Shown here one piece after another: positions 1 to 7,838 of a DNA stretch of 64,000 nt. The first letter of the stretch is position 1. Each line of letters starts with the position of its first letter. The translations under genes were made by a program, and so were the position numbers. The notes below the pieces were generated by a model that saw only the letters and a list, made by a program, of their open reading frames with translations, had not been told where the DNA came from and did not search any database. The DNA is from Obrimoposthia wandeli (taxonomy: Eukaryota): positions 186,001-250,000 of the forward strand of contig CDROCS010000998.1 of assembly GCA_977020255.1 (NCBI GenBank). Reading direction: 5' to 3'.

Positions 1-1380
1 GTTTTCAAAGCGTTTTTGATAGCCTCTATCTTTTGGGGTGCAACGGCAATGACAATTGGAGTCATACTCGCATCACAATTGTATTGGGTTGATTTAAATT
101 TTGCCTCTGAATTCTTTAACTTTGGTCGGCTTCGCCCTTTACATACAAATGGAGTCGTCTTCGGTTTAGTGTGTAACATCTTAATGGGGGTATCACTGTA
201 TGTTGTATGTCGAACTTCTGAAACAACGTTAATTTCTGAGAAGCTTGCATGGGTATTATTCTGGGGGTGGCAAGGGCTTCTGGTGCTAGGCTACATCACG
301 TTACCACTGGGTTTTACCTCAACCAAAGAATATGCCGAGTTTGAGTGGCCATTAGATATTTTAATGGCGGCACTATGGCTGCTATTTGCATATATTTTCT
401 TTGGCACTCTCTTCACTAAAAAAACAAAACACATCTTCGTGTCTAATTGGTTTACTGGCGCAGTCATTATTGTGATCACCATGATCTTCGTAGTGAATAA
501 CTTATCAATACCAGTAACATTAACTAAATCCTATTCTGTTTTTTCTGGTGCCAGTGATGCGTTAGTGCAGTGGTGGTGGGGGCACAATGCCGTTGGATTC
601 CTTCTAACAGCGTCCTTTATCGGCACTAACTATTACATCATTCCCAAGCTGGTTGATCGTCCCATCTATTCTTATCGTCTGTCTATGATCAACTTCTGGG
701 GGCTTATCGGCTTTTATACCTGGGCAGGTACACATCATTTATTGTATTCCTCATTACCCGACTGGATTCAAAATATCGGCGTAGTGATGTCGTTGTTACT
801 TTGGTTGCCATCATGGGCTGGTGCATATAACGCTTACATGACCATTTATTCCAACAAACAAAAGCTACGTGAAAATTACATTGTGTGGTTCTTCATGTCG
901 TCGATCATTTATTACGCCTTAGCGACAGCTGAAGGACCTTTGATGGCAATTCGTTGGTTTAATGTAATTGCACATAATACTAGTTGGGTTATAGGTCACG
1001 TCCATTCTGGCGCATTAGGCTGGGTCGGTATGACTTGTATCGGTACTTTCTACTATCTAGTACCGAAGCTATTTGGTAATCGAGAACTGTGGTCAATGAA
1101 ACTGGTAAAAACTCACTTCTTCCTTGCTCATGCTGGTATTACCTTTTATATCGTGGCGCTGTGGATTGCTGGTATTGGTCAGGGTGTAATGTGGATGGCA
1201 CAAACCGACAGTGGCGCATTAACATACAGCTTTGTCGATACATTAAACTTCATCTCTCCCTACATGTTCTTACGTTTTGTTGGCGGAGCATTATACCTCT
1301 CAGGGATCGTCTTAATGGTGTACAACCTATGGATGACGGTGCGAGTTCAACCTGTTCGAACCGCAGCATCGGAGGCCTAA
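1..1380 (+). CDS. ccoN: cbb3-type cytochrome c oxidase subunit I (5'-truncated by window edge)
   Basis: Frame open from base 1. Motifs RLRPLHTN, WWWGHNAVGFLLT, YTWAGTHHL and GHVHSGALGW carry the heme b/b3/CuB histidines. Confidence 0.97.
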   Translation, partial: VFKAFLIASIFWGATAMTIGVILASQLYWVDLNFASEFFNFGRLRPLHTNGVVFGLVCNILMGVSLYVVCRTSETTLISEKLAWVLFWGWQGLLVLGYITLPLGFTSTKEYAEFEWPLDILMAALWLLFAYIFFGTLFTKKTKHIFVSNWFTGAVIIVITMIFVVNNLSIPVTLTKSYSVFSGASDALVQWWWGHNAVGFLLTASFIGTNYYIIPKLVDRPIYSYRLSMINFWGLIGFYTWAGTHHLLYSSLPDWIQNIGVVMSLLLWLPSWAGAYNAYMTIYSNKQKLRENYIVWFFMSSIIYYALATAEGPLMAIRWFNVIAHNTSWVIGHVHSGALGWVGMTCIGTFYYLVPKLFGNRELWSMKLVKTHFFLAHAGITFYIVALWIAGIGQGVMWMAQTDSGALTYSFVDTLNFISPYMFLRFVGGALYLSGIVLMVYNLWMTVRVQPVRTAASEA

Positions 1381-1383
1381 ATC

Positions 1384-2001
1384 ATGAAGATTAATATTAC
1401 CAAATCTGTCGTGTCATTTATTGTTGTAACATTTCTAGTCGCGTCTTTTTCATTCTTAGTTTGGGTACTTCCGGGCTTTTTCATTCGTGATGATTTAGCA
1501 ATGAAAACCATGGCAAAACCATTAAAGCCGCTGGAATTAGTAGGCCGAGATGTGTATATGGCACAAGGGTGCCATGTGTGCCATACCCAGATGGTAAGAG
1601 ACCTCGAACCTGAACGTGTTCGCTACGGTCGTTCTAATCAAATGGAAGATGATATCTACGAATTCACTTTTTTATGGGGATCCGCACGGATCGGACCTGA
1701 TCTCACTAACATTGGTTTGAAATACACGAATGAATGGCATACCGAACATTTAATTAGCCCACAATCTTTGGTACCAGAATCTATCATGCCACAGTATCCG
1801 TGGTTATTTGAACAGCCTGTAAATAATGCTGATATCGGAAAAAAAATGACGGTGCTACAAACATTAGGTGTGCCGTATTCAGCAGCCGATATAGCGGGAG
1901 CATCAGATATTGTTAAAGGGAAAACCAAAGGCGAAGCCTTAGTGGCTTATTTAATGAGCCTTGGAGTAGATACACATAACAGTATGGGAGATCTACAATG
2001 A
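1384..2001 (+). CDS. ccoO: cbb3-type cytochrome c oxidase subunit II (monoheme c)
   Basis: GRDVY..GCHVCHTQMVR, WGSARIGPDL, SIMPQYPWL; directly after ccoN. Confidence 0.96.
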   Translation: MKINITKSVVSFIVVTFLVASFSFLVWVLPGFFIRDDLAMKTMAKPLKPLELVGRDVYMAQGCHVCHTQMVRDLEPERVRYGRSNQMEDDIYEFTFLWGSARIGPDLTNIGLKYTNEWHTEHLISPQSLVPESIMPQYPWLFEQPVNNADIGKKMTVLQTLGVPYSAADIAGASDIVKGKTKGEALVAYLMSLGVDTHNSMGDLQ

Positions 2002-3473
2002 GTGAATTTTCTGATACTTGGTCCAGTACGCTTACCGTCATCTTCCTGCTTGTCATGCTTGGCGTTGTTCTTTACTTGTTTACTACAAATAAGTTTGCTC
2101 AAACCGACAAATGCTTGTCAACATTTGACGGTATTGATGAGAACGATGCTCCTATTCCTAAAATTGTGTTTTGGGGCTATTTAATCTTCTTTATTGGTGC
2201 CGTGGTATACCTCCTATTGTTTCCTGGTATCGCATCATGGCAAGGCCTTTTGAAATGGAGTGGTAAAAGCGATGCGTATAATGCCCACAGCATTAATCTT
2301 GATACCCGTATAGATAACACTCTGATTAATAACCCTAATGCTAATTTGGCTTTATTAGCGAAAGATGCCGTGATTGTAGATGCTGGTAAATCGTTATTTA
2401 AGGATAACTGCGCAGCGTGCCATGCTATTTCAGGGCAAGGGCAATCAACATTTCCCAACCTTACGGACAGTGAATGGCTTTATGGTGGTAGTGATCAAAA
2501 TATCTACGAAAGTGTTCAGCATGGAAGGCATGGAGTGATGCCTGCGTGGGATGAGCATTTAACACCAGCGGAAATTGATAACGTCACTGACTATGTAATG
2601 AATATCAACAATGCTTCAGCATCCAATGCCATCTTCGAGAAAAACTGTGCAGGTTGCCATGGTAAAAACGCAAAAGGTAACCCCGCCATTGGCGCGCCAA
2701 ATTTAACCGATGATGTGTGGTTACATGGCCGTTCAAAAGAAGCAATCCACAAAAGTATCGCTCATGGATTAAATAATCAGATGCCAGCATTTGGTGGACG
2801 TTTTTCACAAAACCAATTGTTATCAGTCGCCACCTATGTACTGAGCCTTAATCCAGAACATGAAGCCACTTCTGCCAGCTCACAACAGATGTTGTTAAGC
2901 CAATTACTACATCCAGAAACAGCTGGTGCAGGAATGATTCCCGTTACAGTCAAAACCTGTATCGGCTGCCATGGAACAAATGGCGAAGGGCTCGGCAGTA
3001 CTGCACCAAAATTGGCTGGATTGTCATCAGAATATCTGCTGGCTCAGCTTTATAACTTTAAAAATGGCAATCGTAACAATGTCACGATGATATCTATGGC
3101 TGCACCACTAGATGACAAAGCCATGGAAAAAGCAGCCGAGTATTTTGGTCAGCAGACACCGAAAGTATTATCAAAAACAGTATTACGAGGCGATCAAGTG
3201 ATTTATGACGATCTTGCCGCCAAGTTAGTAAACCAAGGGGATTGGTCAAGAGAGTTGCCTTCGTGTGTCACATGCCATGCAACAGCTACCTTGGGTGTCG
3301 ATAATTTTCCACGTCTTGCACAGCAAGATGCTTCTTATTTAGAAAAGCAGTTACTTGACTGGCAACAAGGGATACGTAAAGGGGATCATGACAACATGAT
3401 GGGCAATATTGCCAAGAAATTGACCGATGTTGAGATAAAAGCTATCGCTCAATATCTCGCTAACATGCAGTAA
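1998..3473 (+). CDS. ccoP: cbb3 oxidase subunit III (CcoP) fused to a C-terminal diheme cytochrome c4/TsdB-like module (4 CxxCH)
   Basis: CcoP N-terminus (GIDENDAPIP + TM) with hemes CAACH and CAGCH, then two more c4-type hemes CIGCH and CVTCH (PKLAG..YL..QL, GDWSR, PRLAQQ..Y..KQL). ATGA overlap with ccoO. Confidence 0.9.
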   Translation: MSEFSDTWSSTLTVIFLLVMLGVVLYLFTTNKFAQTDKCLSTFDGIDENDAPIPKIVFWGYLIFFIGAVVYLLLFPGIASWQGLLKWSGKSDAYNAHSINLDTRIDNTLINNPNANLALLAKDAVIVDAGKSLFKDNCAACHAISGQGQSTFPNLTDSEWLYGGSDQNIYESVQHGRHGVMPAWDEHLTPAEIDNVTDYVMNINNASASNAIFEKNCAGCHGKNAKGNPAIGAPNLTDDVWLHGRSKEAIHKSIAHGLNNQMPAFGGRFSQNQLLSVATYVLSLNPEHEATSASSQQMLLSQLLHPETAGAGMIPVTVKTCIGCHGTNGEGLGSTAPKLAGLSSEYLLAQLYNFKNGNRNNVTMISMAAPLDDKAMEKAAEYFGQQTPKVLSKTVLRGDQVIYDDLAAKLVNQGDWSRELPSCVTCHATATLGVDNFPRLAQQDASYLEKQLLDWQQGIRKGDHDNMMGNIAKKLTDVEIKAIAQYLANMQ

Positions 3474-3483
3474 GGAGGCTGAC

Positions 3484-4614
3484 ATGAAACTATTTCGTTA
3501 TTTATCATTTAGCTCTACATCATTCATTTCTGTACGACTGTTTTGCTCAACCTTTTTTTGTTCACAATTGCTTTATTCACAATTGCTTATACTAACACCG
3601 TTACTGTTTTCAATCAGTGTTGTTGCTGAAACGCAATTAGACATGCAACATGAAATTCCGGCTGAACACAAAGACACCGAAGCGAACAAAATGGTGCCAT
3701 ACGCGTTGTCGACAATTCCAAATTCAGAATTCGGCGATAAAGTTAAACTCGGCTATCAACTCGTTACTGACTCTCAGAAAATGAGAGGGAAATATGTATT
3801 TGATAACCAAAACTGTACTAACTGTCACTTAGCATCAGGTAGAAAACCCAATGCTGCACCTTTAGGGGCCGCTTTTTTCGCATACCCTGCTTTTCGTTCA
3901 AAGAACAACAAAGTGAATTCGTATCAGGAACGGATACAAGGGTGCTTTAAGTATTCAATGAATGGGCTAGTTCCACCCAAAGGCAGTGACGAGCTAATCG
4001 CAATTGCCGCCTATTCCTATTGGGTAGGGGTCACCTCAATGTATAATTTCTATGATGTAGAAGCTGATGTACCAGAGCTCTCAGATGCCGCCTTACTGCA
4101 AGGTGGTAACCTGGATGACTTTGTCTTGAATGCTGCGATTAATGGTAAAATGACCATAAAAGAGCGTTCAAAATTACCCGGGCGAGGCTACCCTAAATTA
4201 GCCAAACCGGACATGAAGCCTGATTACGTTCGCGGTAAAACGGTTTACACTAATCACTGTGCTGCTTGCCATAAAGAAGATGGGCAAGGAAGATCTGTGA
4301 AAGGTATTTCATCGTTGCCACCATTGTGGGGTCCGAACAGCTATAACTTAGGTGCAGGTATGCACCGCACAAACACTGCTGCATTTTACATCTATGAAAA
4401 CATGCCTCTTGGCAAAAGTATTCAGCTTTCAAAACAGGAAGCGTGGGATGTTGCGTTATACATGAACTCTCAACAACGACCCCAAGATCCACGTTTTGAA
4501 GGTAATGTAGTTGATACCGATGATATTTATCATAAGCATGACTGTGTGTATGGTGAAAAGGTCAATGGTTCAATACTTGGCAAAGATGCATACCCCAATC
4601 ACCCTGAAGGTTAA
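3484..4614 (+). CDS. tsdA: thiosulfate dehydrogenase/tetrathionate reductase TsdA-family diheme cytochrome c
   Basis: CTNCH and CAACH; RIQGCFKYSMNG (Cys heme-ligand motif); PPLWG.NSYNLGAGM; long hydrophobic N-terminus. Confidence 0.85.
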   Translation: MKLFRYLSFSSTSFISVRLFCSTFFCSQLLYSQLLILTPLLFSISVVAETQLDMQHEIPAEHKDTEANKMVPYALSTIPNSEFGDKVKLGYQLVTDSQKMRGKYVFDNQNCTNCHLASGRKPNAAPLGAAFFAYPAFRSKNNKVNSYQERIQGCFKYSMNGLVPPKGSDELIAIAAYSYWVGVTSMYNFYDVEADVPELSDAALLQGGNLDDFVLNAAINGKMTIKERSKLPGRGYPKLAKPDMKPDYVRGKTVYTNHCAACHKEDGQGRSVKGISSLPPLWGPNSYNLGAGMHRTNTAAFYIYENMPLGKSIQLSKQEAWDVALYMNSQQRPQDPRFEGNVVDTDDIYHKHDCVYGEKVNGSILGKDAYPNHPEG

Positions 4615-4643
4615 AGTGCTGAACACTACATGCAAACAACAAG

Positions 4644-5039
4644 CTATTGACTTTCTTTGGTCATTAGCTTCATTCCAAAATCAAGTTGTTCGCGCCAGAT
4701 TGTATGCAAGTCATCATTGTACTGAGGGTCGTGTTCTTTGACGGCTTGCATTAAACAATCAAACCAGACATTAAATAAATGAGGAGCAATATTCATTTTT
4801 TTATGGCGTAGGGCAATTCTTTTGATTAACTGTTCTTGGGTAAAGGGATCTTGAGTGGGCTGGATCATCGCAAGAGAGGCTTTTAGTGTGAGCATTTGCT
4901 GTTTTTTATCCGTACTCCCAAACATATCTCTAACAGTTACATCTGCATTTATAAATAACGAATAGAATAAAGGTAAAAAATCATCATTGCCCATGCAACG
5001 CTGATAGCTAGCTTGGTAAAGGTTATATTTTTCCATCAA
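4644..5039 (-). CDS. single-domain globin
   Basis: 131 aa; SYQRC..F...FY..F...V..MF and H(F8)-like RIALRHKKMNIAPHLF..W..CL pattern. Confidence 0.75.
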   Translation of the reverse strand: MMEKYNLYQASYQRCMGNDDFLPLFYSLFINADVTVRDMFGSTDKKQQMLTLKASLAMIQPTQDPFTQEQLIKRIALRHKKMNIAPHLFNVWFDCLMQAVKEHDPQYNDDLHTIWREQLDFGMKLMTKESQ

Positions 5040-5179: not shown

Positions 5180-6034
5180 TCAATTATATGAATACTTAGC
5201 TGATGCCTGTAAAACAGTCTTTATACATAATGCTTCATCCAACATCGGGACGCCAATCACTCGTTTCGGTTTCTTGTCGGTCGAAATAGGTAGCTCAACG
5301 GTGAGTAATGCTTGTTGGTTGTCAGCTTGAATTAACACATTCCCTGTTGGGTCGATGATTTGGCTACCGCCACAATAATGACCACTGATCGCTTGAGTCT
5401 CTTCGACCCCAACTCGATTACACGTTGCAACATACATCGCATTTTCGATTGCACGGGCACGACTTATCACTAAGCTTTGCTCACCACCAAAATTAGCGGG
5501 ATGTAATAGCACATCAACATCACGTTGCGCGTACAGTCGAATAATTTCAGTGAACCATAGGTCAAAGCAAACCGCGATACCGAAACACACCCCTTGGAAT
5601 TTAAACGTAACTAACTCGTCACCACGAGAGAAATACTGCTTATCGACATTAGTAAGCGCTAACTTTCTATAAACATCTTGCAAACCAGATTCATTAACAA
5701 CAACGACACTGTTATAAAATGCACCATGTCGTTTTTCTGCAATACCAGCAACCAAAGTAATGTGATACTTATTGGCAAGCGTAATCAAAGACGTAACCGT
5801 TTTTCCATCAATGCTTTCTGCTAATTGATGGATCTCGTCTGAGTGATCAAAAAGATAGCCCGTCGAAAAAAGCTCAGGCGCAACAACAAGCTCCCCTAAG
5901 CCACCACCAGGTTTACTCGTGGCATTATTTACAGCTTGGCTCATAAGCTGATCTAACAAAGCAATATTACCTGCCACATCTTTATGAATCACATCCATTT
6001 GAACCAAACTAATCTTCATTATTACCCTTAACAA
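5180..6034 (-). CDS. carbon-nitrogen hydrolase (nitrilase superfamily)
   Basis: Glu-Lys-Cys triad motifs APELF, YRKL, VCFDLWF; RARAIEN..YV..NRVG. Confidence 0.9.
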   Translation of the reverse strand: MLRVIMKISLVQMDVIHKDVAGNIALLDQLMSQAVNNATSKPGGGLGELVVAPELFSTGYLFDHSDEIHQLAESIDGKTVTSLITLANKYHITLVAGIAEKRHGAFYNSVVVVNESGLQDVYRKLALTNVDKQYFSRGDELVTFKFQGVCFGIAVCFDLWFTEIIRLYAQRDVDVLLHPANFGGEQSLVISRARAIENAMYVATCNRVGVEETQAISGHYCGGSQIIDPTGNVLIQADNQQALLTVELPISTDKKPKRVIGVPMLDEALCIKTVLQASAKYSYN

Positions 6035-7256: not shown

Positions 7257-7343
7257 AAAAATCAGCTAACAATTAGAAGAATATACCCACCCATGCACAA
7301 TGCAGCTTTAAAACAAACAACGAGGTGGAACATGGAGAAAGTT

Positions 7344-7838
7344 ATGAAAAAAAATACATTCATCACCCTGCTATTTAGTAGCGCACTATTTCTATCAAGC
7401 TTTGCAAATGCGCACGATTACAAAGCGGGCGACTTGCAAATTGACCACCCTTGGTCAAAAGCAGTACCCCCCAATTCATCGGTTGCTGCAGCCTTTTTCA
7501 ATGTCACGAATCATGGCAGCGAAAATGATGTATTGATCAGTGCTGAATCTCCGATTGCAGGTAAAGTAGAATTACATGCTCATATTCATGAAGACGGCAT
7601 GATGAAAATGCGTGAAGTTAAAGATATTAAAATCCCAGCAAATGATAGTACTTCACTAAAACCGGGGGCCAATCACATCATGTTTTTCAACCTTACTAAG
7701 GTGCCAAAACTAGGCGATCGCTTTCCACTGACACTGCACTTTAAAAACGCAGGGGAAATGACTATTGAAATTGCAGTTGAAAAAGCAACATATCAGATGG
7801 AAATGAAACCTGAAAAGACAAAAGAGCAGCACCATTAA
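7344..7838 (+). CDS. periplasmic copper chaperone PCu(A)C
   Basis: Signal peptide; H..GDL.I.HPWS; ELHAH..EDGMMKM and PGANHIM Cu motif. Start chosen from GGAG at 7334-7337 (track start 7293). Confidence 0.93.
   Translation: MKKNTFITLLFSSALFLSSFANAHDYKAGDLQIDHPWSKAVPPNSSVAAAFFNVTNHGSENDVLISAESPIAGKVELHAHIHEDGMMKMREVKDIKIPANDSTSLKPGANHIMFFNLTKVPKLGDRFPLTLHFKNAGEMTIEIAVEKATYQMEMKPEKTKEQHH

What the first reader, a model, noticed from the sequence alone, without database searches (positions are those of the whole stretch)
1998..3473. Tetraheme CcoP: oxidase subunit III fused to a TsdB/c4-like electron donor
Seen: four CxxCH motifs in one frame. Hemes 1-2 look like CcoP and hemes 3-4 like the c4/TsdB diheme (GDWSR, PxLAG). 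Known: CcoP is normally diheme, and tsdB normally sits directly upstream of tsdA, which is where this module lies. Inference: a tsdBA operon was captured by in-frame fusion, covalently tethering the donor cytochrome to the oxidase.
Basis: partly seen in the sequence, partly recalled or inferred. Interest (0 to 1): 0.72.

Follow-up and report, generated by a model that had tools for sequence, protein, structure and literature searches.

The report
Oxidase subunit fused to electron donor
In a marine bacterium, the outer cytochrome subunit of a spare oxygen-reducing enzyme (cbb3 oxidase) is naturally fused to the small cytochrome that normally takes electrons from a thiosulfate-oxidising enzyme encoded next door, which points to a rare hard-wired route from thiosulfate to oxygen.

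Summary
Window 1998-3473 (+) is one intact 491-aa ORF with four CxxCH motifs. Residues 1-285 are a genuine CcoP: membrane anchor plus two hemes, above NCBI's ccoP cut-off. Residues 286-314 are an unconserved linker. Residues 315-491 are a cytochrome c4-type diheme module. On a tree this module groups with free-standing TsdB proteins that sit just upstream of tsdA, not with housekeeping c4. A real tsdA follows 10 nt later behind a strong ribosome-binding site. It is not a misassembly: an independent contig spans it, and the same ccoN-ccoO-ccoP::tsdB-tsdA cassette occurs in Vibrio inusitatus, Vibrio sp. 10N.286.49 and a metagenome contig. The fusion is rare. It was found in 4 of about 185,000 species genomes, and two other clusters matched end to end among 1.84 billion protein representatives. 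It is not unique to this genome. It belongs to a ccoQ-less accessory clade of cbb3 oxidases, kept beside the canonical oxidase, whose CcoP always carries an extension. A sister group has the same module followed by sorAB (sulfite dehydrogenase). A common third group has a triheme dehydrogenase-type extension. The best reading is a tethered electron entry, thiosulfate to TsdA to TsdB module to CcoP to O2. The direction of flow is inferred, not shown. I found no paper describing it. It is a new variant of a known kind.

The parts
1..1380 (+). ccoN, catalytic subunit of the accessory cbb3 oxidase. The gene starts 17 nt before the window, at L007:1468 (465 aa).
   Evidence: PF00115 at 314 bits. 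P. stutzeri CcoN 3mk7_A matches at E 7.9e-161 with the heme b, heme b3 and CuB histidines and the cross-link tyrosine aligned. It is 77-78% identical to CcoN of the Vibrio cassettes but only about 50% to canonical CcoN.
1384..2001 (+). ccoO, monoheme subunit II. Its stop overlaps the ccoP start (ATGA), and there is no ccoQ between them.
   Evidence: PF02433 FixO at 193 bits and NF011055 at 224 bits, cut-off 218. Overlap seen. No ccoQ-sized ORF in this operon or in the loci examined in this clade.
1998..2852 (+). CcoP part of the fusion, residues 1-285: two predicted N-terminal helices (FixP_N anchor) and hemes 1-2 (CAACH at 2409-2423, CAGCH at 2646-2660).
   Evidence: TIGR00782 at 215 bits, above the 180 cut-off, over residues 42-285. 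P. aeruginosa and P. stutzeri CcoP match at E 1e-38 to 1e-40 over residues 6-289. Helices 2-30 and 55-74 in the model.
2853..2939 (+). Linker, residues 286-314.
   Evidence: Only 4-14% identity to homologues, against 44-62% in the flanking domains. pLDDT below 50 over residues 290-313. Length varies between the two groups.
2940..3473 (+). TsdB/c4-type diheme module, residues 315-491, with hemes 3-4 (CIGCH at 2958-2972, CVTCH at 3264-3278), plus the stop codon.
   Evidence: c4 6q2u at E 1.5e-23 and the TsdB half of 5lo9 at 5.7e-22. Met364 and Met468 align with the methionines at positions 66 and 167 of P. stutzeri c4, which I recall as its heme ligands, and are invariant. The module groups with free TsdBs on the tree.
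3474..3483 (+). Intergenic 10 nt; the Shine-Dalgarno sequence TAAGGAGG spans the ccoP stop codon and these bases, ending 5 nt before the tsdA start.
   Evidence: Sequence read.
3484..4614 (+). tsdA, a diheme thiosulfate dehydrogenase/tetrathionate reductase with a long hydrophobic leader.
   Evidence: TsdA half of 5lo9 at E 1.2e-65 and AvTsdA 4wq7 at 1.4e-32. Two CxxCH motifs. The heme-1 cysteine (IQGCF.YSMNG) and the heme-2 methionine (GAGMH) are conserved in five orthologues.

Best explanation
This is a four-gene cassette, ccoN-ccoO-ccoP::tsdB-tsdA. It encodes a second, accessory cbb3-type cytochrome c oxidase. Its outermost subunit, CcoP, carries the TsdB diheme cytochrome on a flexible linker of about 30 residues. 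TsdB is the normal electron acceptor of thiosulfate dehydrogenase TsdA. The proposed path is as follows. Periplasmic TsdA oxidises two thiosulfate to tetrathionate at its His/Cys heme. It passes the electrons through its second heme to the two His/Met hemes of the tethered TsdB module. From there they run through the two CcoP hemes, the CcoO heme and CcoN heme b to the b3-CuB centre, where O2 is reduced. This would be a thiosulfate:oxygen chain that bypasses the quinone pool, bc1 and soluble carriers, so energy would be conserved only by the oxidase. Shown: the gene structure, the domain identities, conservation of all heme ligands and of the CcoN metal ligands, the TsdB affinity of the module, conserved synteny, and rarity. 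Inferred: that the subunits assemble, that TsdA docks on the module, and that electrons flow towards O2.
For: Domain identities come and intact CcoN ligands. The genes are translationally coupled: ATGA overlap of ccoO and ccoP, and TAAGGAGG 5 nt before tsdA. The same cassette lies in different flanking contexts in Vibrio sp. 10N.286.49.C2/B1 and V. inusitatus. A 46%-identical metagenomic copy also has tsdA, 4 nt downstream. The closest free relatives of the module are TsdBs encoded 9 nt upstream of tsdA. The tree puts fused modules with free TsdBs (91/92), apart from housekeeping c4 (97/98). The sister operons have the same CcoP::TsdB-like protein followed by SorA (554 bits) and SorB (88 bits), an enzyme that only delivers electrons, and their CcoN forms a clade with the tsdA-linked ones at 100/99. 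Both halves of the fusion diverge in step while the linker does not. Genomes carrying the cassette also keep a canonical CcoN, so this oxidase is a dedicated extra. From the literature: TsdB is the natural acceptor of TsdA (PMC5146829). A direct TsdB-to-cbb3 route has been proposed but only as a possibility (PMC9237845, citing Kurth 2016). A c4 sits bound in the P. aeruginosa bc1-c4c5-cbb3 supercomplex and feeds cbb3 (PMC10556555; PDB 8smr).
Against: There is no expression or biochemical evidence; no RNA run holding the stretch was found. TsdA enzymes are bifunctional and direction cannot be read from sequence. The residue before the heme-2 methionine is Gly, as in the oxidation-biased MpTsdBA, but an N254G change made C. 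jejuni TsdA more reductive (PMC5146829). The only precedent for an extended CcoP, in Neisseria, carries electrons out of the oxidase branch to nitrite reductase (PMC2924362). The structure model is of low confidence (mean pLDDT 63.5) and says nothing about docking. No FNR-type box or convincing promoter was found upstream.
Confidence: 0.7

Rival explanations
1. General entry port. The fused diheme is simply a built-in cytochrome c4 that takes electrons from bc1, like the bound c4 of the Pseudomonas supercomplex. TsdA would be only one of several donors, or an unrelated neighbour.
For: c4 is the best PDB match by a small margin. c4 is a bound donor to cbb3 in P. aeruginosa (PMC10556555). A different downstream enzyme (SorAB) goes with a homologous (44-46% identical) module in the sister group, so the module is not tied to TsdA.
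Against: The module groups with tsdA-linked TsdBs, not with the housekeeping c4 genes. Every full-length tetraheme CcoP whose surroundings were read (9 loci) has a periplasmic sulfur-oxidising enzyme immediately downstream: tsdA in 4 of 4 type A loci and sorAB in 5 of 5 type B loci. Carriers also keep a canonical oxidase for ordinary respiration.
Confidence: 0.13
2. Exit branch, as in Neisseria. Electrons arriving at CcoP from bc1 leave through the TsdB module to TsdA, which works as a tetrathionate reductase under low oxygen.
For: The third heme domain of Neisseria tri-heme CcoP supports nitrite reduction by NirK/AniA (PMC2924362). TsdA is a physiological tetrathionate reductase in C. jejuni (PMC5146829). 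cbb3 oxidases are typical of microoxic life.
Against: The sister operons pair the same kind of module with SorAB, which can only donate electrons. An exit branch would not need its own extra CcoN and CcoO beside the canonical oxidase. In tsdBA organisms TsdB is described as the acceptor of TsdA (PMC5146829).
Confidence: 0.1
3. Artefact or dead gene. The two halves are separate genes joined by an assembly or sequencing error, or the fusion is a recent accident that is not expressed.
For: Only contig-level, not raw-read, evidence was available. The one contig spanning the whole stretch may come from the source sample.
Against: The same in-frame architecture occurs in at least nine proteins from isolates and metagenomes, with all four CxxCH motifs, both methionine ligands and 150 other positions invariant. 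It is present in complete genomes. Pieces at least 99% identical occur in runs from two other studies. Both halves are conserved under evident constraint.
Confidence: 0.02

Closest known systems
TsdB, the diheme electron acceptor of TsdA, and the natural TsdB-TsdA fusion of Marichromatium purpuratum (PDB 5lo9)
   Same: Two c4-type heme domains with conserved His/Met ligand positions. The GDW-containing block lies before the second CxxCH. The module is encoded directly upstream of tsdA. It matches the TsdB half of 5lo9 at E 5.7e-22 and free TsdBs at 48-52% identity.
   Different: It has no signal peptide of its own and is fused by its N-terminus to the C-terminus of CcoP. In M. purpuratum TsdB is fused by its C-terminus to TsdA. 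Here the tether is to the electron sink, not to the enzyme.
Tri-heme CcoP of Neisseria (CcoP fused to a c5-type domain; PMC2924362)
   Same: It is a natural C-terminal extension of CcoP by a soluble-carrier cytochrome domain through a low-complexity linker, arising from a rare gene-fusion event.
   Different: Neisseria has one extra heme, of c5 origin, in the only oxidase of the cell, and the extra domain supports nitrite reductase (NirK/AniA). Here there are two extra hemes, of TsdB origin, in an accessory ccoQ-less oxidase next to an electron-donating enzyme.
bc1-c4c5-cbb3 supercomplex of Pseudomonas aeruginosa (PDB 8smr/8snh; PMC10556555)
   Same: A diheme c4-type cytochrome held at the oxidase passes electrons into cbb3.
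   Different: There the c4 is a separate protein bound non-covalently and is fed by bc1. Here it is covalently part of CcoP and is encoded with a dehydrogenase.
Engineered CcoP-cytochrome cy fusion of Rhodobacter capsulatus (PDB 6xkx/6xkz) and caa3-type oxidases with a fused cytochrome c domain (the latter from my own knowledge)
   Same: The donor cytochrome is covalently joined to an oxidase subunit. 6xkx_p is listed as 'CcoP, cytochrome c-type cyt cy'.
   Different: 6xkx is man-made and monoheme. In caa3 oxidases the fusion is to subunit II of an A-type oxidase, and the donor is the general carrier rather than the partner of a specific enzyme.

Membership tests
CcoP (cbb3 oxidase subunit III) | Score above the curated cut-off of the ccoP equivalog model | tested here: met
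   TIGR00782 at 215.1 bits against a cut-off of 179.95, residues 42-285
CcoP (cbb3 oxidase subunit III) | N-terminal membrane anchor (FixP_N) followed by two CxxCH cytochrome c domains | tested here: met
   PF14715 at 33.4 bits (cut-off 24.9). CxxCH at residues 138 and 217. Helices 2-30 and 55-74
CcoP (cbb3 oxidase subunit III) | Encoded after ccoN and ccoO in one operon | tested here: met
   ccoN and ccoO lie immediately upstream with overlapping or adjacent stops and starts. ccoQ, usual in canonical operons, is absent. It is regarded as an assembly factor, not part of the mature enzyme (PMC10556555)
CcoP (cbb3 oxidase subunit III) | Assembles with CcoN and CcoO into an active oxidase | not testable with these tools
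   Only indirect: the CcoN metal ligands are conserved
TsdB (electron acceptor of TsdA) | c4-type diheme with two CxxCH and methionine sixth ligands | tested here: met
   The alignment to c4 (1etp) places Met364 and Met468 on positions 66 and 167; that these are the heme ligands of 1etp is my recollection. Both are invariant in the 9 fused proteins
TsdB (electron acceptor of TsdA) | Closer to tsdA-linked TsdBs than to housekeeping c4 | tested here: met
   48-52% identity to Shewanella TsdBs. Clade with free TsdBs at 91/92, against the c4 clade at 97/98*. Support is moderate, not starred
TsdB (electron acceptor of TsdA) | Encoded directly upstream of tsdA | tested here: met
   10-nt gap to tsdA, against 9 nt in free tsdBA pairs
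TsdB (electron acceptor of TsdA) | Free periplasmic protein with its own signal peptide | tested here: not met
   The module has no start or signal peptide and continues in frame from CcoP. It is a TsdB-derived domain, not a TsdB protein
TsdB (electron acceptor of TsdA) | Is reduced by TsdA | not testable with these tools
   Needs purified proteins
TsdA (thiosulfate dehydrogenase/tetrathionate reductase), for ORF 3484-4614 | Diheme protein with a His/Cys active-site heme 1 and a conserved methionine at heme 2 | tested here: met
   The cysteine in IQGCFKYSMNG aligns with the cysteine of AvTsdA and MpTsdBA in the block that PMC5146829 describes as holding the heme-1 ligand. GAGMH aligns with their heme-2 methionine block (ligand roles from PMC5146829)
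TsdA (thiosulfate dehydrogenase/tetrathionate reductase), for ORF 3484-4614 | Significant full-length homology to characterised TsdA | tested here: met
   E 1.2e-65 to the TsdA half of 5lo9 and 1.4e-32 to 4wq7. The Pfam SoxA-TsdA domain is just below cut-off, 25.1 against 27

The most novel reading that the evidence does not exclude
The window shows one member of an undescribed class of 'plug-in' cbb3 oxidases in marine Gammaproteobacteria. This is a ccoQ-less accessory clade in which the C-terminus of CcoP acts as a swappable socket wiring the oxidase directly to a particular periplasmic or membrane dehydrogenase. A TsdB module goes with TsdA (thiosulfate). A homologous module goes with SorAB (sulfite). 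A triheme ADH/FDH-type cytochrome subunit, found in many Vibrio, Photobacterium and Shewanella, would serve a still unknown donor or quinol. Each would be a substrate-specific respiratory chain that does not need bc1.
Probability: 0.45. Interest if true: 0.75.

Novelty: new variant of a known kind. Interest (0 to 1): 0.6.

Why it matters
Where the electrons of TsdA/TsdB go in aerobic, tetrathionate-forming thiosulfate oxidisers has been a matter of suggestion. [quoted passage not shown] A natural fusion of TsdB to CcoP, with tsdA kept next to it, is independent genomic evidence for that route. It also offers an experimental handle: a stoichiometric, membrane-bound thiosulfate:O2 assembly in culturable strains (V. 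inusitatus NBRC 102082, Vibrio sp. 10N.286.49.C2). The sorAB-linked sister group and the common pentaheme CcoP suggest that accessory cbb3 oxidases of marine heterotrophs are specialised by changing the electron-entry module on CcoP. That would change how second and third cbb3 operons, now all annotated simply as 'subunit III', are read. It bears on heterotrophic sulfur oxidation in the sea and gives a natural template for tethered donor-oxidase designs.

Tried and rejected
- The genome search 'relatives' failed. G000 is a 1.35-Gb, 6912-contig assembly with no relatives in the collection, so I used own-genome searches and handles instead.
- Taxonomy of the window's organism is not settled. The large ORFs scanned in the window yielded no housekeeping marker. 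An arginine/ornithine antiporter was only 37-47% identical to Photobacterium and Vibrio genomes. The closest CcoN is 78% identical, to a Vibrio.
- An FNR/ANR box search upstream of ccoN found no site in the 350-nt upstream region, and the overall count was at chance level. Promoter and terminator scans were uninformative.
- AlphaFold2 on a 9-sequence alignment gave mean pLDDT 63.5 and pTM 0.44. That is too weak for fold search or docking statements, so I used it only for the helices and the disordered linker.
- Kurth et al. 2016 (JBC, TsdB as electron-accepting unit) is not held in the library. I cite it only through papers that quote it.
- Ten literature searches found no description of a CcoP-TsdB fusion, a tetraheme or pentaheme CcoP, or a cbb3 operon linked to tsdA or sorAB. 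The library lacks most subscription journals, so this is absence in what was searched.
- I first misread the 46 other loci (L026-L071) as canonical CcoP. One search showed that the 44 whose ccoP ORF could be read are all the 718-732-aa pentaheme type. Canonical copies were then found through CcoN.
- P0126, a 516-aa tetraheme CcoP in a canonical ccoNOQP-ccoGH operon, is not the same thing. Its extension resembles CcoP's own domains, not TsdB.
Full report
**What is in the sequence.**
Window 1998-3473 (+) is a single open frame of 491 codons. Its ATG overlaps the stop of the preceding gene (ATGA), with a GGGAG ribosome-binding site about 9 nt upstream. It holds four CxxCH motifs, at residues 138, 217, 321 and 423.

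Pfam finds the FixP_N anchor and four cytochrome c stretches. NCBI's ccoP equivalog model scores 215 bits against a cut-off of 180 over residues 42-285. Solved CcoP subunits of Pseudomonas match residues 6-289 at E 1e-38 to 1e-40.

The last 192 residues match cytochrome c4 of P. aeruginosa and P. stutzeri (E 1.5e-23 and 1.9e-21). They also match the TsdB half of the Marichromatium purpuratum TsdBA fusion (E 5.7e-22). All three matches run across both heme domains. In these alignments Met364 and Met468 fall on positions 66 and 167 of P. stutzeri c4. I recall those as the methionine ligands of that protein; the numbering fits the aligned CxxCH histidines at positions 18 and 123.

**The neighbouring genes.**
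- Upstream are ccoN and ccoO. ccoN is 465 aa and starts 17 nt before the window. It matches 3mk7_A at E 7.9e-161 with the histidines and the tyrosine of the active site aligned. ccoO is identified.
- No ccoQ lies between ccoO and ccoP.
- Ten nucleotides after the ccoP stop, behind TAAGGAGG, starts a 376-aa protein. It matches the TsdA half of 5lo9 at E 1.2e-65 and A. vinosum TsdA at about 1e-32.
- The heme-1 cysteine block and the heme-2 methionine block of this TsdA are conserved. The ligand roles are taken from PMC5146829.

**Is the fusion real?**
A Logan contig of run X1 spans 1300-4700 with one substitution, in ccoO. X1 may be the source sample. A piece from X3, the same sample, covers 2751-2908. 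Runs from two other studies, an invertebrate gut metagenome and a sediment metagenome, contain pieces at least 99% identical on either side of the linker. All runs were available only as assembled contigs, so no raw-read check of the junction was possible.

Comparative evidence is more telling.
- A word-based search of 5.8 billion proteins found eight clusters aligning over 98-100% of the query (P0001-P0005, P0007, P0008 and the fragment P0006). Everything else was an ordinary CcoP of about 300 aa or a form of 714-732 aa.
- An alignment of nine full-length members keeps all four CxxCH motifs, both methionines and a QGDWxR..P.C.TCH block invariant.
- The CcoP part and the diheme part diverge in step: 58% and 62% identity to the Vibrio proteins, 46% and 44% to the Moritella/Shewanella ones. 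The linker, residues 286-314, is 4-14% identical and is predicted to be disordered.

This is the signature of an old, selected fusion with a flexible tether. It is not an assembly error.

**What the C-terminal module is.**
Its closest free-standing relatives are Shewanella cytochromes, at 47-52% identity. The one in S. japonica lies 9 nt upstream of a 349-aa TsdA homologue. A second such pair lies on contig C506 of the same assembly. The TsdA proteins of these pairs are 55-56% identical to the window's TsdA.

In a maximum-likelihood tree, the fused modules and these free TsdBs form one group (support 91/92). They are separate from the housekeeping c4 proteins (97/98*), four c4-like genes from the same assembly, three of which flank genes whose N-termini resemble polA and yihA. 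In the best tree all fused modules lie on one side of a branch, but with weak support (62/91). A single origin of the fusion is therefore allowed and mildly favoured, not shown.

**The wider family.**
The assembly that holds the window is 1.35 Gb in 6912 contigs and contains many bacterial contigs. Some of these carry related operons. Combining them with public genomes gives three types.

| Type | Gene order | Where found |
|---|---|---|
| A | ccoN-ccoO-ccoP::tsdB-tsdA | the window; Vibrio sp. 10N.286.49.C2/B1; V. inusitatus; an ENA metagenome contig at 46% identity with tsdA 4 nt downstream |
| B | same architecture (488 aa, 43-45% identical), then SorA (554 bits) and SorB (88 bits) | Moritella dasanensis; a Moritella MAG; Shewanella sp. 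UCD-KL12; S. psychropiezotolerans; contig C1101 (the CcoP on C5637 also matches end to end, but its surroundings were not read) |
| C | small cytochrome c (seen upstream of ccoN in the two loci read), then ccoN-ccoO-ccoP of 713-732 aa with five CxxCH | at least 44 species of Vibrio (including V. harveyi chromosome 2), Photobacterium, Shewanella and Psychromonas |

The type A cassettes sit in different flanking contexts. The type C extension matches the triheme cytochrome subunit of quinone-dependent alcohol, fructose and glucose dehydrogenases (8gy2_B, E 8.7e-61).

None of these operons has ccoQ. Genomes that carry them also have a canonical CcoN at about 50% identity. V. inusitatus and Vibrio sp. 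10N.286.49.B1 have three oxidases: type A, type C and canonical.

On a CcoN tree the canonical proteins form one clade (100/100*), the accessory ones another (100/100*), and types A and B group together (100/99*). My sequence filter kept only one type C CcoN in that tree.

**Rarity.**
A pattern scan of one genome for each of 185,579 species found the tetraheme form in four species, two of them with tsdA. An exhaustive phmmer scan of 1.84 billion representatives found only two other clusters matching end to end, P0004 (type B) and P0125 (type A). The architecture is thus rare, not routine, and not unique to this genome.

Other extended CcoPs exist but are different things.
- A 516-aa tetraheme CcoP in a canonical ccoNOQP-ccoGH operon has an extension that resembles CcoP's own domains.
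- Triheme forms of 430-452 aa also appeared.
- The known tri-heme CcoP of Neisseria is described in PMC2924362.

**Mechanism.**
The best-supported reading is a tethered electron entry. TsdA oxidises thiosulfate. Its natural acceptor TsdB (PMC5146829) is here part of CcoP. Electrons continue through CcoP and CcoO to the CcoN active site.

The arguments for this direction are indirect.
- The module is of TsdB descent.
- The enzyme gene is kept directly downstream, and the genes are translationally coupled.
- The sister group pairs a homologous module with sulfite dehydrogenase, which can only donate electrons.
- The cassette is an extra oxidase beside the canonical one.
- A c4 sits bound in the P. 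aeruginosa supercomplex and feeds cbb3 (PMC10556555).
- The tetrathionate/thiosulfate couple is of high potential, about +0.2 V by my own recollection of Kurth et al. 2015. Only a cytochrome c-level acceptor would fit.

The main caveat is that TsdA is reversible. The one studied extended CcoP, in Neisseria, sends electrons outwards to nitrite reductase. I give the entry model 0.70, a general c4-like port 0.13, an exit branch to a tetrathionate reductase 0.10 and an artefact 0.02.

**Comparison with the known, and novelty.**
The parts are all known: CcoP, TsdB, TsdA, the c4-to-cbb3 route, and fusions of carriers to oxidases. TsdB fused to TsdA is known in M. purpuratum, and CcoP fused to a c5 domain is known in Neisseria. 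I did not find described, in ten full-text searches, TsdB fused to CcoP, a cbb3 operon ending in tsdA or sorAB, or the pentaheme CcoP clade. Databases name all of them 'cytochrome-c oxidase, cbb3-type subunit III'.

An earlier first-stage note of this scan read the same stretch the same way (s1-237374). I rate this a new variant of a known kind, with interest 0.6. It turns a published suggestion, TsdB donating to cbb3 (PMC9237845), into something testable in culturable strains. It also hints at a modular logic for accessory cbb3 oxidases.

**Limits.**
- No expression data, no raw reads and no reliable 3-D model were available.
- The organism is not identified beyond a marine gammaproteobacterium close to Vibrionaceae.
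- The order of events (tsdA or sorAB as the first partner, one fusion or two) is not resolved by the trees.
- Counts from the pattern scan are lower bounds.

Noticed in passing
L004:316-2472 (-) on contig C2105 of the same assembly; L026-L071, e.g. L053 (Vibrio harveyi chromosome 2) and L030 (Photobacterium angustum): This is a common accessory cbb3 operon without ccoQ, preceded by a small cytochrome c in the two loci read upstream. Its CcoP is 713-732 aa with five CxxCH motifs. The extension is homologous to the triheme cytochrome subunit of quinone-dependent alcohol, fructose and glucose dehydrogenases (8gy2_B, E 8.7e-61). It occurs in at least 44 species, and I found no paper on it. It might make the oxidase quinol-fed or dehydrogenase-fed.
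   Followed up: partly
L002:1492-4311 (contig C1101), L016:6001-9529, L017, L024, L025: The sister cassette is ccoN-ccoO-ccoP::TsdB-like (488 aa) followed by sorA (554 bits, cut-off 600) and sorB (88 bits, cut-off 93). This would be a putative hard-wired sulfite:oxygen chain in Moritella and Shewanella.
   Followed up: partly
window 7293-7838 (+): A PCu(A)C copper chaperone gene (PF04314, 133 bits) lies 2.7 kb downstream of the oxidase cassette. By my own knowledge, chaperones of this kind serve copper delivery to heme-copper oxidases.
   Followed up: no
window 4644-5039 (-): A small globin-like protein of 131 aa (PF00042, 28 bits) is convergent with tsdA, and its stop lies 30 nt from the tsdA stop. 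A CN hydrolase follows at 5180-6034 (-).
   Followed up: no
L007:134-1114, which is 371-1351 nt before the window start: An IS5-type DDE transposase (DDE_Tnp_1_5, 90 bits) sits just upstream of ccoN. The cassette lies in different flanks in each genome that carries it, which suggests it moves as a unit.
   Followed up: partly
window 3484-3630: TsdA here has an N-terminal hydrophobic leader about 28 residues longer than its orthologues. The leader contains a short direct DNA repeat (cacaattgcttta / cacaattgcttat) around 3563-3592. It may act as a membrane anchor rather than a cleaved signal peptide.
   Followed up: no
G000 as a whole; contig C1101 (L008): The assembly holding the window is 1.35 Gb in 6912 contigs and carries many bacterial contigs with at least 20 CcoN genes. 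CcoN of C1101 is identical to that of Moritella dasanensis ArB 0140. The window's contig is one bacterium among several in a host or mixed assembly.
   Followed up: partly
P0126 (Logan contig of SRR14005105): A canonical ccoNOQP-ccoGH operon has a 516-aa tetraheme CcoP. Its extra two hemes resemble CcoP's own domains, an internal duplication. This is a separate way of lengthening CcoP.
   Followed up: partly
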